Of a DNA stretch of 64,000 nt, positions 1 through 16,381 are shown piece after piece. The translations under genes and the position numbers were made by a program. The notes beneath the pieces are model-generated. The model searched no databases and was not told where the DNA came from. It worked only from the letters and a program-made list of their open reading frames with translations. How positions within the stretch are numbered: the first letter of the stretch is position 1; each line of letters begins with the position of its first letter. Where the stretch lies: the IMG/VR virus record IMGVR_UViG_3300031787_007614, positions 248,001-312,000 of that record; one strand, 5' to 3'.

Positions 1-3000
1 ACCAGTAACAATATTACCGCCAGTTACATTACCTTGCGCACTTACTGTGCCGCCTGCTGTGACATTGGTTGTTGCACTAACAATACTGCCGTTGACATTG
101 CCACCAGTTACATTACCTGTTGCACTTACTTCACCAGCTGTTGTGATATTGCCGCCAGTGACATTACCAGTTGCTGTTACCAAACCAACTGTGCGTAAAT
201 TGCCACCAGTTACGTTGCCAGTGATTGCAGCCAAACCACCAGTGACCAAATTGCCACCTGACACATTGGCTGTGGCTGTTACTCCACCGCTAACTGTTAA
301 GTTGCCGCCATCAATGTTGCCTGTAGCACTAAGTCCAGCACCTTGTACCAAAGTGGTAGCAACCACATTACCACCTGCAACGTTGGCAGTAGAAACAATG
401 TTGCCTGTGGCTGTGATCAATCCACCTGTGACAATGTTGCCACCAATCACGTTGCCAGTAGCTGATATTGCTGTTGTGGCAGAAATCAATGCACCTTGCA
501 GATTACCACCAAAAATGTTGCCTGTGGCTGTGATTGTGCCACCTGTCAGCAAGTTGCCACCGTCAATGTTGCCTGTGGCTGAAACTAACCCTGCTGTGCG
601 TAGATTTCCACTATCAACGTTACCAGTTACACTCAAGCTAGGTAAAGTACCAATTGCAGTGGCAACCACGCCAGTTAACAAACTACCATTACCAGCATAG
701 TAGCCGGCACTGATGTTGCCTGTGGTTGTGACGTTAGAAGTAGAGTTCAATGCACTCTGAACATTACCACTCAAACTCAATCCTGCGGCATTCAAATTAC
801 CGCCTGTGATGTTGCCAGTTGCCAGGATCAAACCTGCAGTTGATACATTTCCACCAACTACGTTGCCTGTGGCTGACAAAATACCACCAGTGATGTTGCC
901 ACCAGTGATGTTGCCAGTTGCACTTACTATGCCCGCTGTGGTTAAATTTCCAGTGGCTGTGTTAGCAGTTACATTCAGTCCAGATGCACTGATTGTTCCT
1001 GTGGTGTCAATATTTCCGCCGGTGATATTGCCAGTTGCTACAATCAAACCAGTTGCACTAATTGCTCCGCCAGTAAGAATATTACCACCAGTGATATTGG
1101 CTGTTGCGCTAACTGTGGTTGCTGTTAAGATACCAGTACCAACATTGCCACCAGTGATGTTGCCTGTGGCACTAACTTGTCCAACAGTTCTAACATTACC
1201 ACCTGTGACATTGCCTGCGGCACTGATCAATCCTGCTGTGGTCACGTTGCCGGCTGCTATGGTAGCAGTAGAAGTTACAGATGCTGCTGCCAATGCACCA
1301 ACCACAAATGTACCGTAGCTGTTGACTGTGACAATTTCGTTAGCAATGCTTACGTTGCTGGCTGCAATCAAATTGCCTGTGGAGTTTTGATAACCAATAA
1401 ACGCTGAATTCTCAGCAGTGGTATAATACCACATTTGTTCGCCACGATCTTTGTTATCGTTGACTGTAAGAGGTGTGTTGTTGGCACCACGGCCTAATCC
1501 AATAATTGGATCTTGAACATTTAAGTCTGTGATGTTAATGTAGATAACATTGCCATCAACAGTCAAGTCACCACCCACAACTGCATTACCAGTGATGTTA
1601 AGTGTGGCGCCGTTGACTGTTCCAACTGTGATTAAATTACCGCCAATGACGTTGGCTGCGGCACTGATCAATCCACCTGTGACCAAATTGCCACCAGTTA
1701 CATTGCCTGTAGCAGTTACTATACCACCTGTGAGCAAATTGCCACCTGTGATATTGGCCAGTGCACTGATGTTACCACCGGTGATGCCTGGTCCAACTAT
1801 GATATTTTCAGCAATAACAGTGTTTGTGCTAGTGATATTTCCAGCTGTTCCAATATTGCCGCCAGTGATATTACCAGTTGCTGAAACTGTATTAGTAGAC
1901 AACAACACACCCGAAACTGCAATATTGCCGCCGGTGATGTTACCAGTGCCTGTTACTATACCAGTGCCAAAATATACATTACCATTGAACGCCGCGCCAT
2001 TAACATTGCCGCCTGTGCTGATTTGAGTACCAACTCCGCCGCCCAATATGTTACCGCCGGTGATGTTGCCAGTTGCAGAAATCAATCCAGCAGTGGTAAT
2101 ATTGCCGCCAGTGACATTGGCAGTTGCAATGATATTACTACCGCTTAATATATTACCTGTGGCACTTATGATGCTACCAGCAACAATGTTGCCAGTACCT
2201 GGGCCATTAGTAACTGTTAAATTACCAACTTGTGCATCACCATTACCAAGTAATTTGAATGTGCCAAACAAAATGTTGCCACCGGTGATGTTGCCCACGG
2301 CACTAACTTGTTCCAATGCATTCAAGTTGCCAGTTACAGTATTGCCAGTTACACTCACACTTGGCAGTGTACCAATGCTGGTGGCCACAACGCCAGTTAA
2401 CAGAGCACCATTGCCTAACACGTATCCACCGCTGATGTTGGCAGTGGTTGTGATATTTGCCGCGCTGGTCAATGCACTTACAACATTGCCACTTAGACTC
2501 AAGCCGGTAGCATTCAAATTGCCGCCAGTGATGTTGCCAGTTGCAGAAATCAATCCAGCAGTTAATAAATTACCACCAGTTACGTTACCTGTAATATTGG
2601 CTGTAGTAGAAACTACCAATGCAGCTATGTTACCAGTTCCAATAGTTACCAAATTGCCACCGGTTACATTACCAGTAGCACTGATCAGTCCAGTTACAAA
2701 CGCACCAGTATTGGCAAACACTGCCACATTGGCAATACCACCAACAGAAATGTTGGCGTTACCACCAGTGACACCAATATTGGCTTCTGTAGTACCGTTA
2801 GCAATCTTTGTAGGAGTACCGGCTGCAATGCCTGACAGCAATGCACCGTTACCCAAAATGTAATTACCAGCTACGTTACCTGATGCGCTGACATTGCCAA
2901 CTGTGGTCAAATTGCCACCGCTGACATTGCCTGTTGCAACAACAACACCAGTTGCACTCAATGTTGTTGCTGTGATAACGTTGGCACCAGTAATGTTGCC

Positions 3001-6000
3001 GCCAGCGCCTGTGGTAACAATGTTGCCACCTGTGACGTTACCAGTTGCAGAAACTACGCCAGCAGTCAACAAATTGCCACCAGTTACGTTACCAGTTACA
3101 ATTGCAGTGCCGCTTGTGACTATGCTTGCTACGTTGGCCGTACCAGCTGTTACCAAATTACCACCAGTTACGTTGGCAGTTACTGATACTGTGGTACCTG
3201 TGTGAGTGGTTGCGTTGACATTGGCGCCACCTAAGATATTGCCACCAGTGATGTTGCCAGTTACCGAGACTGTAGTACCTGTGTGAGTGGTTGCATTAAC
3301 GTTAGCACCACCTAAGATATTGCCACCAGTGATGTTGCCAGTAGCACTTACTTGTCCTGCTGTGGTTAGATTGCCACCAGTCACGTTGGCAGTTACTGAT
3401 ACTGTAGTACCTGTGTGGGTAGTTGCGTTGACATTAGCACCACCTAAAATATTACCACCAGTGATGTTGCCAACAGCACTAAATGCGCCAGACGCTGTGA
3501 CTATACCTGTACCATTTGGTGCCAACGCAATGTTGCCGTTGCTACCTGTAATAATTGTTAAAGCACCAGTGTCTACAATATTGCCAGCAATATTCAAGTT
3601 ACCACCAGTAATGTTACCAGTAGCACTTATTTGACCTGCTGTAGTTAGATTGCCACCTGACACGTTGGCAGTTACACTGACTGTGGTACCTGTGTGAGTT
3701 GTGGCGTTAACGTTAGCGCCACCCATGATGTTGCCACCAGTTACATTGCCTGTAGCACTTACTTCGCCAGCTGTGGTCAAATTACCACCTGACACGTTGG
3801 CTGTAGCAACAACTTGTCCTGCTGTGGTCAAATTACCACCTGACACATTGCCTGTAGCACTGATCAAGCCAGTAACATATTCGCCAGTTGCAGCATATAC
3901 CGCCACATTGGCAGTTCCGCCAACCCCAACTGCTACGTTGCCACCTGAGCTTACAATAGAAACATTTGATGTTCCGCTGACAATTTGTGTGGGTGTACCT
4001 GTTGCAACGCCTGTCAACAATGCACCATTACCAACAAAGTAATTGCCAGTCACGTTGCCTGTGGCACTGACTTGACCAACTGTGGTCACGTTGCCAGCTA
4101 TCACATTTCCTTGTGCAGATACAACTCCCAACACAGTCATTGTGTTGGAGTCTGTGTTATATGTAAATCCTGCTACTGCGCCAGCATTGCCATTGGCGTT
4201 GTAAAGCACTTGTGTGTTTGAACCAGGAACAGTTAAGTTACCAGTAATGTTGCCGGCAAAGTTACCCACAAAGTAACCTGTAGTGATAATATTACCTGCG
4301 GCACTTACTGTACCTTGAGTGCGTATGTTTGCGCCGTCAATGTTGCCTGTAGCAGTGATCAATCCTGCTGTGGTCAAGTTTCCACCAGTTACGTTGGCAG
4401 TTACTGATACTGTAGTACCTGTGTGAGTGGTTGCATTAACATTAGCACCACCTAAGATATTACCACCGGTGATGTTACCAGTTGCACTAATCAGACCACC
4501 TGTGGTCAAGTTTCCACCTGACACATTGGCTGCTGAAGTAATATTGCCTGTTGCGCTTACTTGTCCTGCTGTGGTTAAATTGCCACCTGACACATTAGCA
4601 GTAGCAACCACTTGGCCGCCTGTGTTTACATTCCCACCTGTGATGTTGCCCGAAGCACTGATTACTGTGCCAGTTACGCTTTGAGTTGTATTAATGTTGT
4701 TAGCAATAACGTTGCCAGCAACGCTGACCAAACCAGTTGAAACTAAATTTCCGCCACTGACATTGGCAGTTGTGATAATATTAGCAGTTTCAGTACCACT
4801 GGCCAAGTATGTTGAAACATCTGAGTTGGCATATCCTGCTGGCAAGCCAGTCAACGCACTGCCATTACCTAAAATGTATCCGCCACTGATGTTGGCTGTG
4901 GTTGTTATATTTGCCGCAGACACTAATGCACTGACAACGTTGCCACTTAGGCTCAAGCCTGTGGCATTCAAGTTACCACCAGTGACGTTACCAGTAGCTG
5001 TAACCTGCCCTGCTGTGCGTAGATTACCGCCATCTATGTTGCCAGTGACTGAAACATTGCCCACGGTCAATAGGTTATCATCAGTCCGGTAGGTGAGATC
5101 CACATCCGCCCGTGCTATCTGAGCTGTGGTGCGATTCTCTACAAACGTAGGGTAGTAAATGGTTGTTAGGCCGTTTGTGTCTGTTACATCAACAGTTACG
5201 GAATTGACCCCTGTGAGTTGTGAGCCATTACCTAAAATGTAGTTGCCTGAAATGTTAGCAGTAGTTGTAATATTGGCTGCTGAAACTAACGCACTAACAA
5301 CGTTACCACTCAAGCTCAATCCTGTGGCATTTAAATTACCACCTGACACATTGCCAGTTGCTGATATCAGTCCAACAGTGCGTAAGTTGCCACCATCAAT
5401 ATTGGCAGTTACACTCAATGATCCGAGTGTACCAACACTTGTGATATTAGGTTGTGCGGCTGTGCTCAATGTACCGGCAACATTGCCGCCACTGATGTTG
5501 GCAGTGGTTGTTATGTTGCCTGTTCCGCTAATAACATTTGACCCTAACGCGGCCAATAATGTTGTAACATTTGAATCTGCATAGCTGGCAGGTAAACCGG
5601 TCAGTTGACTACCATTACCAATAAAGTAGTTTGCTGTTACGTTACCAGCAACACTCATTCCTGTTGAGGCAAAAGTATAAACGTTGGTCACGCCACCAAT
5701 GTTACCAACCACGTTGCCGTTGGCCACAGGAATATTAAATTCTGTTGTGCCGTTTGAAAGTTTGCTTGCTGATCCAACATTTGAGCTGGCAGTAACGCCA
5801 GTAAGTCCAGCACCGTTACCAATGAAAATACCGTTGACAACTTGTATGTTGCCGTTGGCAAGTAGTGCGCCAATGTTGCCCGAGTAGGTTGGCAAATATG
5901 CCTGAACATTAGCGTTTGAATATGTTGCTGGCAAGCCAGTCAGTTGACTACCATTACCTAATATATAACTGCCGGTGATGTTGCCTGAAGTACTAACTGT

Positions 6001-6870
6001 GGCAGCAGTTACTGCTCCACTCACTCCAACGTTGCCGCCACCTAGGTTACCAGTGTAGGTTGGCAGGTATGCAGCAACGTTTGAATTGCCGTATGTTGCA
6101 GGCAAGCCAGTCAGTTGGCTACCATTACCAAACACATATCCAGCAGTGATGTTACCAGTAGTTGATATTGGGTTGGTGCCTAGTGCAGCCAAATTAGCCA
6201 CAACATTGGCATTGCCGTATGTTGCAGGCAAGCCAGTCAGTTGTGAACCATTACCTAAAACATAAGTGCCCTGAACATTGCCAGTAGTGATAATGTTGCT
6301 AGTGTCTGCGCCACTGGCAAGATAAGATGCCACATTGGCATTGCCATAACTTGTGAGCGTACCGCCACCGCTGATTACAGTTTGTTGACCACTTTCGTTG
6401 GTCATTATAACAGCAGTTGAGTTGGCACTGATTGTGGCATTGCCTAGGAAAATAGTGCTGTTGGAAAGATAAAGATCGTTGAACTGTGCTGTTGGGCTGC
6501 CAAGGCTGTAGGTTAGATTGGCAGCAGGAAGAATATTGGCTTTGACTGTGACTGTGTTGGTTCCAACCACAACCACATTACCGGTGCCAGCAATACCAAC
6601 AGTGACATTGCCGCCTGAACTTACAACAGCAACGTTAGATGTTCCACTTTCAATAGCAGTTGAATTGCCGGTGGCAAGCCCAGTTAACTGTGAACCGTTA
6701 CCAATAAAATACGTACCGTAAACATTGCCACTAGCAACAATGTTATTGGCAGCAGTGATACTGCCTACACCCAAAATATCATTGTTGGTCAACAGCAAAT
6801 TATCGCCACTGGCCAGCTCTTGAATCTGTGCGCTACCTGTGTTTACTACTAACGGAATCTTGTTTGCCAT
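1..6870 (-). CDS. Giant Gly/Asn/Thr-rich repeat fibre protein, >2290 aa, 3' end outside window (not in ORF track)
   Basis: ATG at 6870 gives MANKIPLVVNTGSAQIQELASGDNLLLTNNDI. The frame is still open at position 1 (…GNVTGGNIVTG), and the track lists no stop-terminated ORF from this start. It has dozens of GN(V/I)TGGN(L/I) and F(L/I)GNGSQLTG repeats, which also occur in the fibre at 60928. Confidence 0.9.
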   Translation of the reverse strand, partial: MANKIPLVVNTGSAQIQELASGDNLLLTNNDILGVGSITAANNIVASGNVYGTYFIGNGSQLTGLATGNSTAIESGTSNVAVVSSGGNVTVGIAGTGNVVVVGTNTVTVKANILPAANLTYSLGSPTAQFNDLYLSNSTIFLGNATISANSTAVIMTNESGQQTVISGGGTLTSYGNANVASYLASGADTSNIITTGNVQGTYVLGNGSQLTGLPATYGNANVVANLAALGTNPISTTGNITAGYVFGNGSQLTGLPATYGNSNVAAYLPTYTGNLGGGNVGVSGAVTAATVSTSGNITGSYILGNGSQLTGLPATYSNANVQAYLPTYSGNIGALLANGNIQVVNGIFIGNGAGLTGVTASSNVGSASKLSNGTTEFNIPVANGNVVGNIGGVTNVYTFASTGMSVAGNVTANYFIGNGSQLTGLPASYADSNVTTLLAALGSNVISGTGNITTTANISGGNVAGTLSTAAQPNITSVGTLGSLSVTANIDGGNLRTVGLISATGNVSGGNLNATGLSLSGNVVSALVSAANITTTANISGNYILGNGSQLTGVNSVTVDVTDTNGLTTIYYPTFVENRTTAQIARADVDLTYRTDDNLLTVGNVSVTGNIDGGNLRTAGQVTATGNVTGGNLNATGLSLSGNVVSALVSAANITTTANISGGYILGNGSALTGLPAGYANSDVSTYLASGTETANIITTANVSGGNLVSTGLVSVAGNVIANNINTTQSVTGTVISASGNITGGNVNTGGQVVATANVSGGNLTTAGQVSATGNITSAANVSGGNLTTGGLISATGNITGGNILGGANVNATTHTGTTVSVTANVTGGNLTTAGLITATGNIDGANIRTQGTVSAAGNIITTGYFVGNFAGNITGNLTVPGSNTQVLYNANGNAGAVAGFTYNTDSNTMTVLGVVSAQGNVIAGNVTTVGQVSATGNVTGNYFVGNGALLTGVATGTPTQIVSGTSNVSIVSSGGNVAVGVGGTANVAVYAATGEYVTGLISATGNVSGGNLTTAGQVVATANVSGGNLTTAGEVSATGNVTGGNIMGGANVNATTHTGTTVSVTANVSGGNLTTAGQISATGNITGGNLNIAGNIVDTGALTIITGSNGNIALAPNGTGIVTASGAFSAVGNITGGNILGGANVNATTHTGTTVSVTANVTGGNLTTAGQVSATGNITGGNILGGANVNATTHTGTTVSVTGNITGGNILGGANVNATTHTGTTVSVTANVTGGNLVTAGTANVASIVTSGTAIVTGNVTGGNLLTAGVVSATGNVTGGNIVTTGAGGNITGANVITATTLSATGVVVATGNVSGGNLTTVGNVSASGNVAGNYILGNGALLSGIAAGTPTKIANGTTEANIGVTGGNANISVGGIANVAVFANTGAFVTGLISATGNVTGGNLVTIGTGNIAALVVSTTANITGNVTGGNLLTAGLISATGNITGGNLNATGLSLSGNVVSALTSAANITTTANISGGYVLGNGALLTGVVATSIGTLPSVSVTGNTVTGNLNALEQVSAVGNITGGNILFGTFKLLGNGDAQVGNLTVTNGPGTGNIVAGSIISATGNILSGSNIIATANVTGGNITTAGLISATGNITGGNILGGGVGTQISTGGNVNGAAFNGNVYFGTGIVTGTGNITGGNIAVSGVLLSTNTVSATGNITGGNIGTAGNITSTNTVIAENIIVGPGITGGNISALANITGGNLLTGGIVTATGNVTGGNLVTGGLISAAANVIGGNLITVGTVNGATLNITGNAVVGGDLTVDGNVIYINITDLNVQDPIIGLGRGANNTPLTVNDNKDRGEQMWYYTTAENSAFIGYQNSTGNLIAASNVSIANEIVTVNSYGTFVVGALAAASVTSTATIAAGNVTTAGLISAAGNVTGGNVRTVGQVSATGNITGGNVGTGILTATTVSATANITGGNILTGGAISATGLIVATGNITGGNIDTTGTISASGLNVTANTATGNLTTAGIVSATGNITGGNITGGILSATGNVVGGNVSTAGLILATGNITGGNLNAAGLSLSGNVQSALNSTSNVTTTGNISAGYYAGNGSLLTGVVATAIGTLPSLSVTGNVDSGNLRTAGLVSATGNIDGGNLLTGGTITATGNIFGGNLQGALISATTAISATGNVIGGNIVTGGLITATGNIVSTANVAGGNVVATTLVQGAGLSATGNIDGGNLTVSGGVTATANVSGGNLVTGGLAAITGNVTGGNLRTVGLVTATGNVTGGNITTAGEVSATGNVTGGNVNGSIVSATTNVTAGGTVSAQGNVTGGNIVTG
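3159..3730 (-). repeat. Near-identical intragenic repeats of the fibre (unit GNITGGNILGGANVNATTHTGTTVSVT), further copy at ~4381-4480
   Basis: The DNA block gtacctgtgtgagtggttgc…ccacctaagatatt recurs near 3195, 3274, 3407, 3686 and 4415, mostly with synonymous differences. Confidence 0.8.
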
Positions 6871-6892: not shown

Positions 6893-7594
6893 TTATGTGG
6901 TATACACAACCACGTTGCCGGTGCGAGTCAAAACATTAAAACTGTTGTTACTGGACAATGGTACGGATACCGGAGTGGTTCTAGTGCCCACAGTTAGTGT
7001 TCTAGTAAAAACAGTGTTACCAATGTAAATATTGCCAGTGGCATTGATATTGCCGCCAGTAACGTTGCCCGAAGCACTGACCAAGCCAGTGCTGAAAATA
7101 TTTGCAGCTTGTAGGTTGCCGCTGAGAGTGAGGCCGTTGTTGTAAAACACAGCCACATTGCCAGTTCCGCCAATGCCAATTGTGACATTACCACCTGAAC
7201 TGCGAACAGCTACATTTGATGTGCCGTTAGCAATGGCTGTGCCGTTGCCAGATCCACCAGCAATACCTGTAAGCAGGCTGCCGTTGCCCACAAAATACGA
7301 AGCATAAACTGTGTCAATTCGTTTGGTTGGCGATCCTATGTCATACACAGCATCAATTGAAGGCATGATGGAACTATTGGCCTGAATGTTTCCAATACCA
7401 TTGGCAGCCAGCACCAAATTGGAATTAAGACCGTTGACAGAAATTACATTGTTGGCAATAACAACATTGCTGCCAACAGGACCTGCGGCATAAATTTCTG
7501 TAAAATTGTCATTTACAGCATCGAATGCATCACGCAACGGCTCGCCCGTGCCATCATTGGCCGCGGCGCCGGTGTCAATTATTTGTTGTGCCAT
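6893..7594 (-). CDS. Virion protein with T4 gp9/gp10-like N-terminal domain plus short fibre repeats
   Basis: The N-terminus IDTGAAANDGTGEPLRDAFDAVNDNFTEIY matches the gp9/gp10 'DGTGD.LR....N.NF.E.Y' motif. GNGSLLTG and GNVTGGN repeats follow. Confidence 0.7.
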   Translation of the reverse strand: MAQQIIDTGAAANDGTGEPLRDAFDAVNDNFTEIYAAGPVGSNVVIANNVISVNGLNSNLVLAANGIGNIQANSSIMPSIDAVYDIGSPTKRIDTVYASYFVGNGSLLTGIAGGSGNGTAIANGTSNVAVRSSGGNVTIGIGGTGNVAVFYNNGLTLSGNLQAANIFSTGLVSASGNVTGGNINATGNIYIGNTVFTRTLTVGTRTTPVSVPLSSNNSFNVLTRTGNVVVYTT

Positions 7595-7644: not shown

Positions 7645-9159
7645 TTAGGCAACTTTGGTGAAAGTAAGGTAAGAACCTGTTTTAGCGGTTATTATACCGG
7701 TGGAATTTTGCAATCTCAAGGTCACTGCGGTATCTACTGTGTTGAAGAAAGTACCCGAAATTCTCAGTGTTCTAGCAACGGTGCCGGTGCTGGCATAAGT
7801 GGTTGCCACGTCATCACTTGTGGTTTTTGTAGCTGTGGCAAATGCAGACGTACCAGTGGTTTGAGTTTCTGTAGTGAAGTTACAGGTGCCTGATGAAAAA
7901 TTAACGCTTGGAGAAATGGTCATTGATCCGTCTGGGACCAGTGTAACATAACTCACAAAAGAATATCGATTGTTAGCAGCGGCTGTAAATGTCAATGTTC
8001 CAATGTTGGCCGGGGTAGCTGAAGAAATTGGAGCATCGCTAGATTGCACAACAAAATTTGGTACTCCAATACCGTTACCAGTCAGCAGGGTTCCAATACT
8101 GACGTTGGCGCCAGAAACATTTGATGTGATAACTGCGTTTCCAGCATTGACATTGGCTGTCAAGCTGGCTGTGGTACCAATAAACACGTTGCCGCTGGTA
8201 ATGTTACCAGTTGATGTGATAACACCTTGGCTGACCAAATTACCACCTGTAACGTTGCCAGTTGTGCTGATGCCGCCGGCTCCTGCGCCAATTGCACCAA
8301 CACTGATCAAATTGCCGCCGGTGATGTTACCTGTAGCTGTTATCAATCCAGCTGTGGCCACATTACCACCAGTTACATTGCCCGTGGCTGTTACCAACCC
8401 GGCTGTGCTTAGATTGCCGCCATCTATGTTGCCAACTATGGTCAATGTGCTGGATCCGTACATGGTGCCACTAACTGCAAATGTGTGCAATGGTGCAGTG
8501 TTGGCAATACCAACGTTGCCAGATGCTCCAATGATAGCAATACGAGTGGCTGCTGTGGTGTTGGCTGTTTGAATTAAAATATTGGCATTGCCAAGAGAGT
8601 CGGAGTACACAGCTCTGATGGCAGCGGTAACTCTAGATCCTGGTGCTGCATCAGATGTAAACCATTCAATTGCTCCAATGTTGGCACCAACTGTGGTAAT
8701 AGCAGTATTTGCATCAGAAAAACGCAGAATTCTGTCTGTAGTTGCACCTGAAGTATAACTTAAAATAATATTGCTTGATGCAACAATATTTCCACCACTG
8801 ACATTGCCTGTTGCTGAAATCAATCCAGCAGTTAATACGTTACCGCCTGTGACATTGCCAGTCACAGATTCTGTTCCTGTGATAACCACACCAGTGGTTG
8901 ACCAAACTGCCACATTGGACACACCACCTACTGAAATTACTGCATTGCCACTGGCAGTGGGAATAGCAATACTGGTGGTTCCGTTAAAGATATTATCGCC
9001 AGAAATATTACCTGTGAGTGCGGCATTGCCAGTCACTGAAAGGTTACCGTTGATCACAACCGTGGCTGCATTGGCTGTCAAGCCTTCAAAAGTTACTGTG
9101 TCGGTATTTCCTACGGATTGGAATACCAAATTGCCTGCGACACGATTGTAGGTAGTCAT
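7645..9159 (-). CDS. Fibre-like structural protein with GNVTGGN repeats
   Basis: 504-aa ORF with the same repeat family as the giant fibre, preceded by CATAAATA and an AAGGA SD. Confidence 0.75.
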   Translation of the reverse strand: MTTYNRVAGNLVFQSVGNTDTVTFEGLTANAATVVINGNLSVTGNAALTGNISGDNIFNGTTSIAIPTASGNAVISVGGVSNVAVWSTTGVVITGTESVTGNVTGGNVLTAGLISATGNVSGGNIVASSNIILSYTSGATTDRILRFSDANTAITTVGANIGAIEWFTSDAAPGSRVTAAIRAVYSDSLGNANILIQTANTTAATRIAIIGASGNVGIANTAPLHTFAVSGTMYGSSTLTIVGNIDGGNLSTAGLVTATGNVTGGNVATAGLITATGNITGGNLISVGAIGAGAGGISTTGNVTGGNLVSQGVITSTGNITSGNVFIGTTASLTANVNAGNAVITSNVSGANVSIGTLLTGNGIGVPNFVVQSSDAPISSATPANIGTLTFTAAANNRYSFVSYVTLVPDGSMTISPSVNFSSGTCNFTTETQTTGTSAFATATKTTSDDVATTYASTGTVARTLRISGTFFNTVDTAVTLRLQNSTGIITAKTGSYLTFTKVA

Positions 9160-9747
9160 TTAAAGATCCTTTGTGTTATTTATGCGGTTTTGAAAGTCTT
9201 CCATTTGCATGGCAGCTAGATTTTTAATGCCCCGTAACTCAGCAATTGCCGCTGTGGTTTTGCCCATTACCCGGAAAAATCCAACGTCTGGAAAGTCCTT
9301 GCACACTCTTTGCAGTTGTTTGACCCAATTTCCTGTGTAAGTTGGGCGGGCAGAGCTTTTTTTATAGAACTCAGTGTCTGCGTACACATTGTTAAATCGG
9401 TCCCCGGCTGTGGGACCCATATCAAATCCAATGAGATACACTGCACGATTTTGATCTATAGCCGCAAGAGCCACTGCAATGGGTCCTGAACTGAATCCAA
9501 AATAATCATCCGGGACTCTATGTGCTCCTAGTCCCGGTATGGGTTTTCGAGTGTACATCCTGTGTTCACTGGCATATCCACTGTGTTGAATGGATTCGCT
9601 AATGGGCTTGTCTGTGCTGACCAAAACCGTGGGTGCAAATTCTCGATACAATGCATTACATCCATAGATTGGACCAAGCTCTTTGAGAGTTTGCAAATTC
9701 AATTCTAACCGACTGACACCATTGCCTAATACAAAACCAAAACTCAT
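9160..9747 (-). CDS. Maf/DUF115 (MptE-like, sialyltransferase-like fold) putative glycosyltransferase
   Basis: Motifs VLGNGxSR, GCNALYR, LVSTD, SSGPIA and VYLIGFD occur in the order typical of Maf/DUF115 and GT29/GT42-like proteins. Confidence 0.6.
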   Translation of the reverse strand: MSFGFVLGNGVSRLELNLQTLKELGPIYGCNALYREFAPTVLVSTDKPISESIQHSGYASEHRMYTRKPIPGLGAHRVPDDYFGFSSGPIAVALAAIDQNRAVYLIGFDMGPTAGDRFNNVYADTEFYKKSSARPTYTGNWVKQLQRVCKDFPDVGFFRVMGKTTAAIAELRGIKNLAAMQMEDFQNRINNTKDL

Positions 9748-9779
9748 AAAAAATCCTCCTAGTAGTTATCTAGGAGGAT
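9748..9779 (-). terminator. 10-bp hairpin plus U-run; terminator of the 261-aa gene that also sequesters the SD of the Maf-like gene
   Basis: The minus strand reads ATCCTCCTAG-ATAACTA-CTAGGAGGAT-TTTTT-ATG. Confidence 0.75.
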
Positions 9780-9795
9780 CCAGGGGTTAAATCAA

Positions 9796-10581
9796 TTAAG
9801 AAGTAACGTTGTCAACAATGGCCAAGTCAAGCAGATTTTGTTGTCCGCTTTGTACTGTGCCTGAGTTTGCTGCACCAGTGGTACCTGATTTGATAACTGT
9901 ACCTTCGTCTGTAAAGAAGTTGGTTGCATAACGCTTGTCAGCCACAACGCTGGCAGGGTCATAGTTTGCGCCGCCAGTCCAATCCAACAAGAACTTGTTG
10001 GTCAATTTGGAGATAGTAGTAGCAGTAGAATCAGTAACTGTAAATGTGATAGCCATCAATCCAGCTGCTGGAGTAGTGTCATCGGCCAGTACACAAACAC
10101 CCACTGAGAATGCTGCGCCGTTGCCAGATCCACCAACAGAAGTTGCTGTGAAAATTGTGCCTAATCCAAAGTTACTAGGAGCACCGGCTGCGGTCCAGTT
10201 AGTTGTTGTTCCAACAACACTAATTTGATATGCTTGCCCAACTACAAAACTGCCGTCGTTAACGCCATTGGCATCACCAACTAGGTATTTGTGTGAACCT
10301 TTTTGACGGATAATATATCCATTAGCAACGCCAATACCGCTGCCGTCAGGGGCTGCAATGTTCACAATTACGTCAATTCTAGGATTGGTTGCCGAAGGCG
10401 TATCAGTGGGGGCTGCACCACCCACCACGCCAAGATATTCAGTAGCACTGAGTGTGTCGCCTGTGTTGGTCACAGGGGCAGTTAATGATCCAAAATTTGG
10501 AAAGCCAATGTCAACGCTAACGGCTGCGCCGCCGTTGCCTGAACCAGTGCTTGTTTTTTGTATTTTAAGAGGACGTCCCAT
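9796..10581 (-). CDS. Putative virion structural protein (MGRPL N-terminus)
   Basis: 261-aa Gly/Thr-rich ORF with a strong SD (AAGGAGA), an upstream TAAATA and its own terminator. Confidence 0.6.
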   Translation of the reverse strand: MGRPLKIQKTSTGSGNGGAAVSVDIGFPNFGSLTAPVTNTGDTLSATEYLGVVGGAAPTDTPSATNPRIDVIVNIAAPDGSGIGVANGYIIRQKGSHKYLVGDANGVNDGSFVVGQAYQISVVGTTTNWTAAGAPSNFGLGTIFTATSVGGSGNGAAFSVGVCVLADDTTPAAGLMAITFTVTDSTATTISKLTNKFLLDWTGGANYDPASVVADKRYATNFFTDEGTVIKSGTTGAANSGTVQSGQQNLLDLAIVDNVTS

Positions 10582-10608
10582 TTTTGTTTCTCCTTACAGA
10601 AGTCCGAT

Positions 10609-10663
10609 GCGAGTTCTAGTCGCTACGCGGCGGGTTAAACCGCATAAAACACCGTATTGTGTT
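10609..10663 (-). promoter_or_regulatory. Structured 5' leader (three adjacent hairpins) of the MGRPL gene
   Basis: Stems AACAC/GTGTT, TATGCGG/CCGCGTA and GCGA-CTAGAAC-TCGC lie between TAAATA (10670-10675) and the SD. Confidence 0.45.
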
Positions 10664-10690
10664 GACAAGTATTTATGGAAATGTTAGAAT
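10662..10690 (+). promoter_or_regulatory. sigma70-type promoter for the TPR-glycosyltransferase
   Basis: TTGACA-17 nt-TAGAAT with an extended TG. A second, late-type TAAATA lies at 10707-10712, 5 nt before the ATG. Confidence 0.65.
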
Positions 10691-10717
10691 GTAGTCATAT
10701 AGCCATTAAATAGTACC

Positions 10718-11869
10718 ATGGAAACTGATTTTTTAATTTCACAAGGCAACCAACATCGAGCTGACCGACAATACGGTGAAGCCCTGCAATGTTATGCATT
10801 GGCATTTGCCAAAGACATGGATTCAGCAGCGGCATTCAACAACTACGGCAATGTCATGCGAGAAATTGGACATCCTCAACGAGCCATACCGTTCTTGCAA
10901 CATGCTGTTCTCTTGGATCCAAATAACGTAACTGCTAGATTCAATTTGGCAGTGGCACTGTTGTTGATGGGCGACTACACCAATGGATGGCCAGCTTATG
11001 AAGCCAGATGGCAATACGAACATCTTGCTGGCACTGAACCCAAACACCAACAGCCTCGCTGGCGTGGCGAAGATCTCAAAGACAAAACTATTCTTGTGGT
11101 AGGCGAACAAGGCCACGGAGACAACATTCAGTTTTGCAGATTCTTGTACAACTTGCATGTGGCTGGAGCAAAAATCAAGCTTCAGGTTACCGACGGATTG
11201 ATTCCTTTGTTGCAATCTAGCGACGTCATTCAGCAGTTGGGAACATACACTGACGACATGGGTGAGTTTGATTATTGGATTCCTATCATGAGCATCCCTG
11301 GCATACTTGGAGTAACGTTGGAAAATTTGCCCAGGCCAGTGAACTATCTCAACGTAGATCAAGGCCGTCAGCAAGAGTGGTTGCAGATACTGGGTCCTAA
11401 AACCCGCATGCGTGTGGGTTTTTGTTGGAGTGGGCGCAGAGATTCTTGGCTTAATCAACACAAGAGTGTGCCGTTCCCTGTAATGCTGGACATGATCAAA
11501 TCTAATCCTCAATACGAATGGATCAATTTGCAAGTTGACGCCGATCCTGAAGAAGAAGAAGCAGCCTTGCTTGAAGCAGGAGTGCAGGCCTATCCTGGCA
11601 GCGTTAAAAGTTTTGTAGACACTGCGGCATTAATTATGGCCATGGACGTTGTTATTGGCGTAGACACTGCTGTGTCACACTTGAGTGGCGCATTAGGTCG
11701 GCCCACATGGATAATGCTACAAAAATTCAGCACAGACTGGCGTTGGTTGTTGAATCAAGATTCTAGTCCTTGGTATTCAACTGCTAGACTTTTTAGACAA
11801 GAAAACTTTGATGACTGGACAGCAGTTACCAAAAAAGTCAGCCAATATCTAGGGTGGATGAAAGTTTAA
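10718..11869 (+). CDS. TPR-repeat GT-B (GT9-like) glycosyltransferase
   Basis: N-terminal TPR helices (AFNNYGNVMRE, ARFNLAVALL) are followed by EQGHGDNIQFCRF, VGFCWSG, DTAALI…VDTAVSHLSGALGRP, DWRW and SPWY…LFRQ. Confidence 0.85.
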   Translation: METDFLISQGNQHRADRQYGEALQCYALAFAKDMDSAAAFNNYGNVMREIGHPQRAIPFLQHAVLLDPNNVTARFNLAVALLLMGDYTNGWPAYEARWQYEHLAGTEPKHQQPRWRGEDLKDKTILVVGEQGHGDNIQFCRFLYNLHVAGAKIKLQVTDGLIPLLQSSDVIQQLGTYTDDMGEFDYWIPIMSIPGILGVTLENLPRPVNYLNVDQGRQQEWLQILGPKTRMRVGFCWSGRRDSWLNQHKSVPFPVMLDMIKSNPQYEWINLQVDADPEEEEAALLEAGVQAYPGSVKSFVDTAALIMAMDVVIGVDTAVSHLSGALGRPTWIMLQKFSTDWRWLLNQDSSPWYSTARLFRQENFDDWTAVTKKVSQYLGWMKV

Positions 11870-12132
11870 TTTAGATCTTGCCAGGCGCCAACTACGCCAT
11901 TATATCCACGAAATTTACCTGTGTTAATGTTGTAGTAAATCAAGCCTGCTACACCTGCAGGATCAGCTACCAATCCTAATAACTGCATAGTACTGGAAGT
12001 AGTTTTGCCAACCGCACTGACATTGCCTACATTTATAATGTCGTTATTACTTAAATTAAGATTGTCACCAACTGCTATTTCTTCAATTTGACTGCTCGCT
12101 GAGTTGACAACCAGCGGAATTCGATTAGCCAT
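11866..12132 (-). CDS. Small virion (mini-fibre/decoration) protein, N-terminal paralogue of the giant fibre
   Basis: 26 of the first 40 aa are identical to the giant fibre start. It has a C-terminal GLIYYN…FRGYNG…W motif and GATAAATA 4 nt before the ATG. Confidence 0.7.
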   Translation of the reverse strand: MANRIPLVVNSASSQIEEIAVGDNLNLSNNDIINVGNVSAVGKTTSSTMQLLGLVADPAGVAGLIYYNINTGKFRGYNGVVGAWQDLN

Positions 12133-12209: not shown

Positions 12210-13406
12210 TTAGGAGAATGACAAGTTAGATACTGCGATCTCACCCACATAGTCACCGGCGTTACCGAATGACGATGCAGTGTTGGTCAACTCAATGTAA
12301 CCATAACGTGTCATGAATGACACCACTGGTTCAAAGGTTGATGGATCCAACACAACACCACTGCTCATCAACGGAATGTATGGGCAGTAGAATGCAGGAG
12401 CGTCAGCTTCTGAAGAGCCTTTGTAGCCAACCAGAACTGGAGTTGTATCGCTGGCATAGCTGTCAACGAACACACGCATAGCGCCGTTTAATGTGCCAAC
12501 AAACTTGGTGTTTGTAGGTGCTTCGAAGGTGCCTTCTGTGGTACGAGCAAAAGCTGAAGTTGTTGCTGATTGCAACACTGTCAGAGCAGCTGAACTCACA
12601 ACAGCGTAGTTACCAGCGCCACGACGAGTACGTTGGGCGATCAAGTTAGCAACACGGTTGATCAAAACTGCCAATGCGGCATGTTCGTCACCAACGAATG
12701 TAGCTGTACCTGAAACGGTAGCTTGGTTGTATGTGAACTCAGTGGATGCCAATGAGCGCAAGCTCAAAAGAATCTCTTGGTCGATTTCAGCGGTAATCTC
12801 TTGAGCCAGAGCAGCCATGATTTCTGCTTCAACGTCAATACCATGCATGGCTTGTGCGTCTTGTGCAGATTCAAAAGTCCAGCGAGCTTGCAGCTTGCGG
12901 GTCTTGGCTTCAACAGCTTGTTTCAAGATTTGAACGCTGATTTGCTTACCGCCGGTACCTTCCATGCTGGCTGTTGAGCCGCCGGTGTAGGTAGTAGCTG
13001 TAGCTGTGCCTGCTGGCACAGTAGAGTAAGCAGTTGCAATTGTGAATGGGCTCAATGCTTCTTGACCAGCTGTAACGCTTGTAGCGGCAGCTGAGTTGTC
13101 AGTCAAGCTGTTGGCGTAACGCACACGCAAGGTGTGAATTTGGCCAACTGGGCCTGTCATGGGCTGAACGCCAACCAACTCGTTAGCAATAACGGTAGGC
13201 ATAACACGACGAATCACTGGCAGAATCACACGGTTAAGTGTGGCGATGTTGCCAGAAACAGTACTTCCAGAAGAAGCATTCTCTTTCAAATAGCGACGAG
13301 TATTCTCAAGAATAACTTTCATGCTATTGCGTTTGGTGCCTTGGAGGCCTTCTAACAGGGCCTCTTTGGTCTCATCCCAACGACTTTCTAATAGATCTTG
13401 TGACAT
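12210..13406 (-). CDS. gp23: Major capsid protein (T4 gp23 family)
   Basis: Motifs GVQPMTGPVGQI, VEAKTRKLQARWTFE.AQD..A.HGID.EAE, AFYCPYIPL and FMTRYG. Confidence 0.97.
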   Translation of the reverse strand: MSQDLLESRWDETKEALLEGLQGTKRNSMKVILENTRRYLKENASSGSTVSGNIATLNRVILPVIRRVMPTVIANELVGVQPMTGPVGQIHTLRVRYANSLTDNSAAATSVTAGQEALSPFTIATAYSTVPAGTATATTYTGGSTASMEGTGGKQISVQILKQAVEAKTRKLQARWTFESAQDAQAMHGIDVEAEIMAALAQEITAEIDQEILLSLRSLASTEFTYNQATVSGTATFVGDEHAALAVLINRVANLIAQRTRRGAGNYAVVSSAALTVLQSATTSAFARTTEGTFEAPTNTKFVGTLNGAMRVFVDSYASDTTPVLVGYKGSSEADAPAFYCPYIPLMSSGVVLDPSTFEPVVSFMTRYGYIELTNTASSFGNAGDYVGEIAVSNLSFS

Positions 13407-14532: not shown

Positions 14533-15171
14533 TTAGATTTTGAGTTCTCGGATAAGGCGTTTAACCTCACCTGCGAGATACTTCTTCACTTTGTCGTCCT
14601 GACCAGACTCTCTAGCCATCTCTAAGATCTTATGACCGTTTCTCATATTCATGAGACCTTCATAGATTGCTGTAGGATACGCATTAGGAGCACTGGGTTG
14701 GGCAACCACATCTATAGTGACTATTTCAAAGTCACTTACATGTCCGGTTCTGTCATCGACATTACCTGATCCACGACTGCTAACACCCAGCTTCACGCCT
14801 GATGTCAACAGAGTCTTTATCAATTCACCCATTGGGGTTGGCAGAATTTTCAACTTGCCGCAACCGGCATGTCCGTCCATCCACATGCCTTCAACTGTGT
14901 GACACACACGATCTAAATTGATTTTTAAATCATCTGGATGGTCCACTTCACCTAAAACGGAGTTACCGTCACGGATCTGCTCGTTGATAGTTTCTACTGC
15001 TTTGATAATTTCGTGTCGGGGGTAGATACGCTCATTTGCATTGCGCTTGTCGCCTTCAATGCAGATGCCTTTGAGATAGAGATGCTTTTTGCCGCCAACA
15101 TCAGCTTCTTCCAAAACTTGGATGTTGGCCTGGCTAAAAGTAAGATCTTCTCTTAGGTACTTAGATGACAT
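14533..15171 (-). CDS. gp21: Prohead protease (gp21)
   Basis: Motifs NANERIYP, LGEVDHP, TPMG, LGVSSRGSG and DVVAQPSAPNA. Confidence 0.95.
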   Translation of the reverse strand: MSSKYLREDLTFSQANIQVLEEADVGGKKHLYLKGICIEGDKRNANERIYPRHEIIKAVETINEQIRDGNSVLGEVDHPDDLKINLDRVCHTVEGMWMDGHAGCGKLKILPTPMGELIKTLLTSGVKLGVSSRGSGNVDDRTGHVSDFEIVTIDVVAQPSAPNAYPTAIYEGLMNMRNGHKILEMARESGQDDKVKKYLAGEVKRLIRELKI

Positions 15172-16373: not shown

Positions 16374-16381
16374 TATTTATA
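16374..16381 (-). promoter_or_regulatory. T4-type late promoter TATAAATA (representative of ~15 TAA[A/G/C]TA sites)
   Basis: Exact T4 late consensus overlapping the portal stop codon; a gp55-like sigma factor is encoded in the window. Confidence 0.8.

What the first reader, a model, noticed from the sequence alone, without database searches (positions are those of the whole stretch)
9160..11869. Two flagellin-glycosyltransferase-like enzymes (Maf-like and TPR-GT-B) embedded among Thr/Ser-rich fibre and capsid genes: candidate virion glycosylation system
Seen: a Maf/DUF115-like ORF and a TPR + GT-B ORF sit between the MCP gene and three very Thr/Ser/Asn-rich fibre genes, each behind a late-type TAA(A/C)TA. 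Known: Maf proteins and the TPR-GT-B protein FlmG are the two bacterial classes that O-glycosylate flagellin Ser/Thr with nonulosonic acids, with TPRs recognising the protein substrate. Inference: the phage may glycosylate its own fibres or capsid using host nucleotide sugars, for shielding, adhesion or host mimicry. It could instead modify host surface structures.
Basis: partly seen in the sequence, partly recalled or inferred. Interest (0 to 1): 0.75.

Follow-up and report, generated by a model that had tools for sequence, protein, structure and literature searches.

The report
Flagellin-type glycosyltransferases in a phage structural module
An uncultured freshwater jumbo phage carries two intact sugar-transferring enzymes of the kinds bacteria use to decorate flagella and adhesins, set between its capsid gene and its fibre genes, so it probably sugar-coats its own particle, though this has not been shown.

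Summary
The interval 9160-11869 contains three genes, not two.

- **p261 (9796-10581, minus strand).**

ORF A belongs to a conserved late cassette: MCP, variable genes, p261, ORF A, fibre. In 56 of 56 related viral loci the MCP gene lies upstream on the same strand. In 38 of 61 loci the fibre ATG abuts the ORF A stop codon. TPR-GT is accessory: it is present in 38 of 56 loci, lies on the opposite strand and has a sigma-70-like promoter.

The "late promoter" before ORF A is the loop of a conserved hairpin, not a promoter.

No nonulosonate pathway was found. The phage does encode an NDP-sugar dehydratase and an aminotransferase.

Virion glycosylation is the best reading (about 0.5) but is unproven. 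This is a new variant of known kinds.

The parts
9160..9747 (-). ORF A, 195 aa. A stand-alone Maf/GT42-type (MptE-like superfamily) nucleotide-sugar transferase domain. Invariant residues are G8 N9 G10 R13 C30 N31 G88 G107 D109 N120.
9751..9781 (-). Conserved RNA hairpin followed by a U-run, between p261 and ORF A. It is terminator- or attenuator-like, and its 3' arm contains ORF A's AGGAGG Shine-Dalgarno sequence.
   Evidence: The fold has a 12-bp stem and z -2.8. The stem is kept by compensatory changes in L002, L003 and L004, while the loop sequence differs.
9796..10581 (-). p261, the 'MGRPLK' protein. It has no known family and is rich in Thr and Gly. It is a conserved upstream neighbour of ORF A, with its own ATAAATA motif, a long conserved 5' leader and a strong SD. 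It is a candidate abundant late (virion) protein and a candidate substrate.
   Evidence: No Pfam, PHROG, NCBIfam or PDB hit. Alignment A6. More than 3,000 metagenomic homologues. Present in 47 of 56 loci. Leader conservation.
10670..10676 (-). ATAAATA, similar to the T4 late promoter TATAAATA. It lies 95 nt upstream of p261.
   Evidence: 9 of the 10 ATAAATA copies in the window lie within 150 nt upstream of a same-strand gene. The motif is invariant in four relatives.
10662..10690 (+). Sigma-70-type promoter-like site, TTGACA-17-TAGAAT with an upstream TG, in front of TPR-GT.
   Evidence: It matches 11 of 12 consensus positions. It is partly conserved in relatives.
10718..11869 (+). TPR-GT, 383 aa. 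Three TPRs (residues 3-99) precede a GT9-like GT-B domain (residues 117-383). Family-wide invariant residues include E130 Q131 G132 G134 D135, D310 and H321.
11866..12132 (-). p88, a small ORF whose N-terminus resembles that of the giant fibre (MANxIPLVVN...). It occupies the variable slot between MCP and TPR-GT.
   Evidence: phrog_6002 virion structural protein, E 4.9e-10. Sequence comparison. The slot holds other genes in relatives: a methyltransferase, or Cpn10 with two other genes.
12210..13406 (-). Major capsid protein (T4 gp23 family). It is the upstream anchor of the cassette.
   Evidence: PF07068, E 6.6e-97. It is upstream and on the same strand as ORF A in 56 of 56 loci.
7645..9159 (-). 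504-aa fibre protein (17.5% T, six GNxxGGN motifs). Its ATG directly follows the ORF A stop codon. An ATAAATA motif lies at 9177-9183, inside the 3' end of ORF A.
   Evidence: The gap is 0 nt in 38 of 61 related loci.
6893..7594 (-). 233-aa fibre or baseplate-connector-like protein.
   Evidence: phrog_677, E 1.1e-8. Composition.
1..6870 (-). Giant repeat fibre, more than 2,290 aa, running off the window. It has 33 GNxxGGN motifs and only 0.7% K+R.

Best explanation
The window is part of a roughly 350-kb uncultured freshwater jumbo phage with T4-type head genes. Its late structural module carries a conserved cassette: MCP, variable genes, p261, ORF A, fibres.

ORF A is a minimal Maf/GT42-type glycosyltransferase domain. 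It is made at a low level by read-through of a hairpin behind the strongly expressed p261 gene. Its translation is coupled to the first fibre gene.

A subclade, including this phage, has added a second enzyme on the opposite strand. This enzyme has three TPRs fused to a GT9-like GT-B domain. It belongs to the same family as FlmG-type flagellin glycosyltransferases and as TPR-GTs encoded beside trimeric autotransporter adhesins.

The most likely mechanism has three steps:
1. In the infected cytoplasm, before assembly, the enzymes O-glycosylate Ser/Thr of phage structural proteins. Candidate substrates are p261, the Thr/Asn/Gly-rich repeat fibres and possibly the MCP.
2. The donors are nucleotide sugars, either host-made or partly phage-made.
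3. The TPRs select the protein substrate.

Shown: the folds, conserved active-site motifs, synteny, and the contexts of relatives. Inferred: that the acceptor is a phage protein, the identity of the sugar, and any benefit such as shielding or adhesion.
For: Enzyme identity:
- ORF A shares G8 N9 G10 S12 C30 N31 Y34 and the SSG and G-x-D motifs with Cst-II.
- These residues are invariant across 68 diverse and 76 clade sequences.
- The WaaC-type VDT..H motif aligns, and EQGxGD is invariant.

Structural linkage:
- MCP is upstream and on the same strand in 56 of 56 loci.
- The fibre ATG abuts the ORF A stop in 38 of 61 loci.
- The cassette persists at 43% ORF A identity.

Context of relatives:
- TPR-GT9 homologues sit beside a Maf and flagellins (L112), beside flagellins in Caulobacteraceae, and beside YadA-type adhesins in about 17 Burkholderiaceae loci.
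- In an unrelated podovirus the homologue lies 0.9 kb after the MCP gene, with FkbM, GalT-like and acyltransferase genes. In a cyanomyovirus it lies among tail-fibre genes.
- GNxxGGN fibres follow in 17 of 25 loci that have TPR-GT, against 2 of 16 that lack it.

Sugar supply: the phage encodes an NDP-sugar 4,6-dehydratase-like enzyme and a DegT aminotransferase.
Against: - No glycan or substrate can be observed with these tools.
- The GT42 catalytic His188 aligns with Thr138, and that position is not conserved in the family. The chemistry of ORF A is therefore uncertain.
- TPR-GT is accessory, lies on the opposite strand and has a sigma-70-like promoter. It may be expressed early and may act on host proteins.
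- NeuB and CMP-sugar synthetase were not found in this genome or in five related partial genomes.
- The link between TPR-GT and the fibre motif is confounded by phylogeny and is not strict.
- p261 is not shown to be a virion protein.
Confidence: 0.5

Rival explanations
1. The enzymes modify host structures rather than the virion. Targets could be lipooligosaccharide, flagellin, pilin or an adhesin that serves as the receptor. The modification would block superinfection or stop progeny from being trapped on debris. The linkage to fibre genes would then reflect co-evolution with the receptor.
For: - GT42 enzymes sialylate LOS, and Maf and FlmG act on flagellin.
- TPR-GT has a sigma-70-type promoter on the opposite strand and is accessory, like a moron.
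Against: - ORF A sits inside the late operon and is translationally coupled to a fibre gene across the whole clade.
- ORF A lacks Maf's flanking domains and any membrane or lid segment.
- TPR-GT homologues recur inside the structural modules of unrelated phages.
- Two relatives of this phage are binned with a Haliscomenobacter MAG. To my knowledge that genus is non-flagellated.
Confidence: 0.2
2. ORF A is not a glycosyltransferase. It is another nucleotide-using enzyme of the MptE-like/pyrophosphokinase fold, or a catalytically altered assembly factor for p261 or the fibre. Only TPR-GT would be a true glycosyltransferase, with a function unrelated to ORF A.
For: - The GT42 catalytic His is not conserved.
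- The window protein itself has no significant Pfam hit.
- ORF A occurs without TPR-GT in 18 of 56 loci.
Against: - The only significant sequence-profile hits in the PDB are sialyltransferases, and the CMP-site motifs match position for position.
- A pterin or thiamine kinase has no evident role in a fibre operon.
Confidence: 0.15
3. The genes are ordinary auxiliary sugar-metabolism genes that alter host cell-envelope polysaccharide. Such genes are common in aquatic phages. Their position near structural genes would be incidental.
For: - Elsewhere on the contig the phage carries dehydratase, aminotransferase and epimerase genes.
- The pelagiphage HTVC008M homologue of ORF A lies between uvsY and uvsW, not among fibre genes.
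Against: - The position is conserved in 56 of 56 loci down to 43% identity, with start-stop coupling to the fibre gene.
- The TPR domain argues for a protein acceptor.
- The sugar genes are 27 kb or more away from the cassette.
Confidence: 0.1

Closest known systems
Maf (motility-associated factor) flagellin glycosyltransferases, e.g. Magnetospirillum Maf, PDB 5mu5
   Different: ORF A is only 195 aa. It lacks the Maf_flag10_N domain and the C-terminal substrate-binding or TPR part. The window protein gets no PF01973 hit of its own. No flagellin or nonulosonate genes are present. It is encoded by a phage.
GT42 sialyltransferases Cst-I and Cst-II (Campylobacter) and the P. multocida enzyme 9c08
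   Same: These are the only significant sequence-profile hits in the PDB. G8 N9 G10 S12 C30 N31 Y34 sit at identical positions, and the SSG and G-x-D motifs are shared. They are the top Foldseek hits.
   Different: The catalytic His188 is not conserved, and the Tyr156/Tyr162 region is not alignable. ORF A has no lid or membrane-association segment. The acceptor in GT42 is LOS, not protein.
FlmG-type flagellin glycosyltransferases (Caulobacter; eLife 2020, PMC7591256)
   Same: The architecture is the same: N-terminal TPR and C-terminal GT-B. The GT domain is homologous to flagellin-adjacent TPR-GTs (probability 100% against L112; 27-30% identity to Caulobacteraceae copies).
   Different: The phage protein has 3 TPRs (about 100 aa), whereas FlmG has a 313-aa TPR domain. 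There is no flagellin or Pse/Leg locus. The true FlmG sequence was not compared directly. The donor is unknown.
GT9 heptosyltransferases (WaaC, WaaF) and the autotransporter heptosyltransferase TibC (PDB 4rap)
   Different: Sequence identity is 14-18%. The phage protein has a fused TPR domain. There is no evidence for ADP-heptose use. TibC's iron-binding dodecamer features were not examined.
Phage-encoded virion glycosylation in mycobacteriophages. This rests on my knowledge of Freeman et al. 2023. The concept is echoed in PMC11256854.
   Same: Glycosyltransferase genes sit next to capsid and tail genes, and the acceptors are presumed to be virion proteins.
   Different: The enzyme families differ. 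The host, the phage type (a jumbo myovirus-like phage with a T4-type head) and the habitat differ. Here nothing has been shown experimentally.

Membership tests
GT42 sialyltransferase (Cst-II type) | Sialyltransferase-type single Rossmann-like (GT-A variant) fold | tested here: met
GT42 sialyltransferase (Cst-II type) | CMP-site motifs: N-terminal GNGxS, C30-N31, S132-G133, D154 | tested here: met
   The profile-to-chain alignment places G8 N9 G10 S12 C30 N31 Y34, S87-G88 and D109 on the Cst-II residues. These residues are invariant in the family.
GT42 sialyltransferase (Cst-II type) | Catalytic general base His188 | tested here: not met
   His188 aligns with Thr138. The column is not conserved in 68 relatives. 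This is a sequence alignment only, not a superposition.
Maf / MAF_flag10 flagellin glycosyltransferase | Central MptE-like (PF01973) glycosyltransferase domain | tested here: met
Maf / MAF_flag10 flagellin glycosyltransferase | Maf N-terminal domain (PF20157) and a C-terminal substrate-binding domain | tested here: not met
   ORF A is 195 aa and a single domain. The bona fide Maf in L112 is 651 aa with PF20157 and PF01973.
Maf / MAF_flag10 flagellin glycosyltransferase | Genomic link to flagellin and to Pse/Leg biosynthesis | tested here: not met
   No NeuB or CTP_transf_3 was found in the contig (63% complete) or in five related partial genomes. The neighbours are capsid and fibre genes.
FlmG-type TPR glycosyltransferase | N-terminal TPR domain and C-terminal GT-B domain | tested here: met
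   The architecture is as described in PMC7591256.
FlmG-type TPR glycosyltransferase | Homology of the GT domain to flagellin-linked TPR-GTs | tested here: met
   hhalign probability 100%, E 3e-46, 34% identity to the L112 protein, which is flanked by a Maf and two flagellins. 36 of 41 Caulobacteraceae genomes have a homologue, and 4 of 6 sampled copies lie 1-4 kb from flagellin genes. The published FlmG sequence itself was not available for comparison.
FlmG-type TPR glycosyltransferase | Acts on flagellin with CMP-Pse or CMP-Leg | not testable with these tools
   No flagellin lies in the phage locus. The donor cannot be inferred from the fold.
GT9 (heptosyltransferase family) | PF01075 match above the gathering score and a GT-B fold closest to GT9 structures | tested here: met
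GT9 (heptosyltransferase family) | Catalytic and binding Asp residues (WaaC Asp13, Asp261) | tested here: inconclusive
   V-D316-T-A-V-S-H321 aligns with WaaC V-D261-T-G-L-S-H266. D135 in the invariant EQGxGD, which follows strand 1, occupies the place of the WaaC MGD13 motif. That placement is by position in the model. I recalled the WaaC residue roles from memory.
GT9 (heptosyltransferase family) | ADP-heptose as donor | not testable with these tools
   FlmG-type relatives use CMP-nonulosonates, so the donor is open.
Phage virion glycosylation system | Glycosyltransferase genes embedded in the structural module and conserved with it | tested here: met
   Analogous placement is seen in two unrelated phages.
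Phage virion glycosylation system | Virion proteins carry glycans that depend on these genes | not testable with these tools
   Needs virions or co-expression together with mass spectrometry.

The most novel reading that the evidence does not exclude
A very abundant, uncultivated clade of freshwater jumbo phages has taken over the bacterial toolkit for cytoplasmic O-glycosylation of filaments. The toolkit consists of a minimal Maf-type enzyme as a core gene and a FlmG/adhesin-type TPR-GT as an add-on. The phages use it to glycosylate their own virion: the small p261 protein and the giant GNxxGGN repeat fibres. The donors are ulosonic, nonulosonic or amino-deoxy sugars drawn from the host and from phage-encoded enzymes. 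The same TPR-GT9 family would then be a general, so far unrecognised class of glycosyltransferases for repetitive fibrous proteins: flagellins, trimeric autotransporter adhesins and phage fibres.
Probability: 0.35. Interest if true: 0.8.

Novelty: new variant of a known kind. Interest (0 to 1): 0.62.

Why it matters
If the enzymes do glycosylate the virion, this would extend phage-encoded virion glycosylation. So far it is shown mainly for actinobacteriophages, and for chloroviruses among viruses of eukaryotes. It would now reach a globally abundant freshwater jumbo-phage clade, and it would use enzyme classes known only from flagellin and adhesin modification.

Each protein has thousands of close homologues in metagenomes. 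The family would supply small, self-contained protein O-glycosyltransferases: a 195-aa Maf-type core and a 383-aa TPR-GT. These could be used to study how such enzymes choose substrates, which the FlmG and Maf literature describes as an open question.

The recurrent pairing of TPR-GT9 genes with YadA-type adhesins in Burkholderiaceae is a separate testable lead. I found no paper on it in the library searched.

Tried and rejected
- **Single-sequence searches of ORF A.** They gave nothing in the PDB and only noise in Pfam and NCBIfam. A 68-sequence profile was needed.
- **hhalign of the ORF A profile against the single Maf of L112.** Weak: probability 1%, only the GNGxS motif aligned. It is uninformative because the template was one sequence.
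- **GT-domain profile against the PDB by sequence.** Only the 29-residue WaaC motif was found, at E 0.47.
- **p261.** No hit in Pfam, PHROGs, NCBIfam, the PDB profile search, cultured phages or Atlas features.
- **Complex prediction of ORF A with p261.** The result was no verdict (score 0.01). It is not evidence either way.
- **Genome searches for a sialic-acid-type pathway (NeuB, CTP_transf_3).** Nothing was found in six partial genomes. All are only 23-63% complete, so absence is not proven.
- **Flagellin and NeuB searches in five bacterial genomes with TPR-GT9 homologues.** Co-location could not be mapped from contig numbers. I replaced this with direct inspection of the loci.
- **Metatranscriptome contigs.** MCP has high word depth, and low-depth fragments match ORF A, p261 and TPR-GT. 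Contigs of related phages pile up on the conserved MCP, and DNA carry-over cannot be excluded. I do not use this as evidence of expression.
- **Literature searches for phage DUF115/Maf or fibre O-glycosylation.** No relevant paper was found.
Full report
**Setting.** The window is the reverse strand of positions 47194-111193 of a 220.5-kb IMG/VR viral contig. CheckV rates the contig 63% complete, which implies a genome of about 350 kb. The head genes are of T4 type: gp23 MCP at 12210-13406, gp21-type protease at 14533-15171 and gp20 portal at 16377-18137. The nearest cultured MCPs belong to jumbo phages such as Vibrio 2.275.O, Sinorhizobium Phosso, PA5oct and Rak2-like phages. They match only over the MCP gene, at 64-68% nucleotide identity. 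Related sequences occur in freshwater, river and estuary samples.

**What lies at 9160-11869.** The interval holds three ORFs, not two.
- ORF A: 9160-9747, minus strand, 195 aa.
- p261: 9796-10581, minus strand, 261 aa, starting MGRPLKIQK.
- TPR-GT: 10718-11869, plus strand, 383 aa.

In the direction of transcription on the minus strand, ORF A is followed by three fibre genes.
- A 504-aa protein at 7645-9159, whose ATG comes directly after the ORF A stop codon.
- A 233-aa protein at 6893-7594.
- A giant protein of more than 2,290 aa at 1-6870.

The fibres are rich in Thr, Asn and Gly and nearly free of Lys and Arg. The giant one carries 33 GNxxGGN motifs. It omits p261 and the opposite orientation of TPR-GT.

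**ORF A.**
- The single sequence finds nothing in Pfam or the PDB.
- The family is large. It has 3,338 close homologues in the 90% clusters and 887 clusters at 50% identity. Most members are stand-alone proteins of about 190 aa.
- A profile of 68 diverse members (A1) has invariant G8 N9 G10 R13 C30 N31 G88 G107 D109 N120.
- The only PDB sequences this profile hits significantly are the GT42 sialyltransferases Cst-I, Cst-II and the P. multocida enzyme, at E 1e-7 to 4e-6. The alignment puts G8 N9 G10 S12 C30 N31 Y34 on the identically numbered Cst-II residues. It puts S87-G88 and D109 on S132-G133 and D154.
- Of the 68 members, 18 hit PF01973 (MptE-like/DUF115) and 14 hit PF06002 (CST-I). A 435-aa relative passes the PF01973 cutoff.
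- The AlphaFold2 model is confident: pLDDT 95.5, pTM 0.92.
- Foldseek ranks the GT42 enzymes first, then the MptE kinase and Maf.

The label 'Maf-like' is thus supported at fold level.

Three caveats apply.
1. ORF A is only the catalytic core. It lacks Maf's N- and C-terminal domains.
2. The GT42 catalytic His188 aligns with Thr138, in a column that is not conserved.
3. Kinases share the fold.

**TPR-GT.**
- Pfam finds TPRs in residues 1-100. It also finds PF01075 (GT9) just above the cutoff, but only over residues 299-330. Language-model features agree, with a score of 0.98.
- The model (pLDDT 93.2) has six TPR helices followed by a two-lobed GT-B domain.
- Foldseek also recovers the TPR + GT-B protein glycosyltransferases SPINDLY and OGT.
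- The motif V-D316-T-x-x-x-H321 aligns with WaaC V-D261-T-x-x-x-H266.
- E130 Q131 G132 G134 D135 are invariant in 46 phage and bacterial sequences.

**Relatives of TPR-GT and their neighbours.** A scan of one genome per prokaryotic species found bacterial proteins 29-42% identical over the whole GT domain. Their contexts are informative.
- In a Rhodospirillales MAG (L112) the homologue is flanked by a full Maf (PF20157 + PF01973) and two flagellin genes. hhalign between the phage GT domain and this protein gives probability 100% and E 3e-46.
- 36 of 41 Caulobacteraceae genomes carry a homologue. In four of six sampled copies of about 600 aa, flagellin genes lie 1-4 kb away. In two, a DegT aminotransferase lies within 1-3 kb. 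FlmG is described as a 596-aa TPR + GT-B protein (PMC7591256). These copies are therefore FlmG-type by architecture and context.
- In about 17 Burkholderiaceae loci the gene directly follows a YadA-type trimeric autotransporter adhesin of about 1,550-1,670 aa.

The family is thus repeatedly paired with genes for filamentous, repetitive surface proteins.

Two unrelated phages place homologues in their structural modules.
- A 44-kb podovirus has, in order, the MCP gene, two small genes, the TPR protein, an endonuclease, an FkbM methyltransferase and a GalT-like protein. An acyltransferase follows a few genes further on.
- A cyanomyovirus has the homologue among its tail-fibre genes.

**Synteny in the phage clade.** I examined 80 viral contigs that carry an ORF A homologue (43-100% identity).
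- The MCP gene is upstream and on the same strand in all 56 loci that contain both genes. The median distance is 2.4 kb.
- A p261 homologue is detectable in 47 of these.
- TPR-GT is present in 38. It is absent from all 10 of the most divergent loci and from several closer ones.
- The next gene starts 0 nt after the ORF A stop codon in 38 of 61 loci.
- Its product is a fibre-like protein with a conserved N-terminus of the type MSTxKRVSGDY.
- The triad of p261-like gene, ORF A and fibre persists even where p261 shrinks to 119-149 aa.

ORF A is therefore a core gene of the structural module, and TPR-GT is an accessory insertion. GNxxGGN fibres lie downstream in 17 of 25 loci with TPR-GT and in 2 of 16 without it. 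Phylogeny confounds this comparison, and there are exceptions in both directions.

**Expression signals.**
- ATAAATA occurs 10 times in the window. Nine copies lie within 150 nt upstream of a same-strand gene. This resembles the T4 late promoter TATAAATA.
- One copy lies 95 nt upstream of p261, ahead of a conserved leader and a strong SD. Another lies inside the 3' end of ORF A, 24 nt before the fibre ATG.
- Between p261 and ORF A there is a 12-bp hairpin followed by Us. I read this as an attenuator that keeps ORF A expression low relative to p261.
- TPR-GT has a near-consensus sigma-70-type promoter. It also has TAAATA 11 nt before its ATG.

**Sugar supply.**
- NeuB and CMP-sugar synthetase were not found in this contig or in five related partial genomes.
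- Outside the window the contig does encode an NDP-hexose 4,6-dehydratase-like enzyme next to a DegT aminotransferase. The aminotransferase's best model is PseC, but the score is far below the cutoff.
- The contig also encodes a GDP-fucose-synthase-like epimerase next to TerL.
- The donor sugars remain unknown.

**Verdict.** The enzyme assignments are sound, and the structural linkage of ORF A is very strong. Glycosylation of phage structural proteins is the best-supported function, at about 0.5. The rivals are modification of host structures (0.2), a non-GT role for ORF A (0.15) and incidental auxiliary metabolism (0.1). No paper in the searched library describes such a system. I class it as a new variant of known kinds, with an interest of 0.62.

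Noticed in passing
L086 and L087 (contigs NZ_JBBAKG010000003.1 and NZ_JBBAKG010000001.1): Two contigs of 148 kb and 183 kb, binned in a Haliscomenobacter sp. MAG, each carry the whole phage cassette: protease, scaffold, MCP, TPR-GT, p261, ORF A, fibre. They are jumbo-phage genomes inside a bacterial bin. This is either a hint that the host is a Saprospiraceae bacterium or a binning error.
   Followed up: partly
L090-L141 (e.g. L092:1051-8852, L093:1034-8867): In about 17 Trinickia, Paraburkholderia and Ralstonia genomes, a 596-676-aa TPR-GT9 gene directly follows a YadA-type trimeric autotransporter adhesin gene. This suggests a dedicated adhesin glycosyltransferase. I found no paper on it.
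   Followed up: partly
window 45435-60137 (+): A single open reading frame of 4,900 aa, preceded by a 1,226-aa ORF whose stop overlaps its start. It lacks the GNxxGGN motifs of the fibres. I did not examine it further.
   Followed up: no
G000:C1:17247-20544 (outside the window; L147:5248-8545): ThyX is followed by an NDP-sugar 4,6-dehydratase-like gene and a DegT-family aminotransferase. Together these would be a phage-encoded route to a 4-amino-4,6-dideoxy sugar nucleotide.
   Followed up: partly
G000:C1:143500-151219 (L148:501-8219): Two radical-SAM/SPASM enzymes, four ORFs without any family and a GDP-fucose-synthase-like epimerase lie in one co-directional block that ends at the large terminase gene. 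A radical-SAM/SPASM gene also sits near the Maf gene in the bacterial locus L112.
   Followed up: no
window 11866-12132 (-), with L002 and L003 for comparison: The slot between MCP and TPR-GT is variable. In this window it holds an 88-aa ORF that copies the N-terminus of the giant fibre. In relatives it holds a 304-aa MTS-family methyltransferase, or 50-, 549- and 241-aa genes plus a Cpn10 co-chaperonin.
   Followed up: partly
window 1-6870, + strand frames: Long antisense ORFs rich in Pro, Val and Leu (up to 271 aa) run opposite the giant fibre gene. They are a by-product of the repetitive GGN/ACN codon pattern and are not genes.
   Followed up: no
window 12256-13225: In four freshwater and river metatranscriptome assemblies, the MCP region has word depths of about 100-470, against 0-22 for all neighbouring genes. 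Many related phages share this conserved gene, so the clade appears abundant and active in such waters.
   Followed up: partly
L146 (Pelagibacter phage HTVC008M 77489-78319): A 276-aa relative of ORF A, annotated as hypothetical, lies between uvsY and uvsW. The match is 34% identical and comes in two pieces around an insertion. The record holds three matching places.
   Followed up: partly
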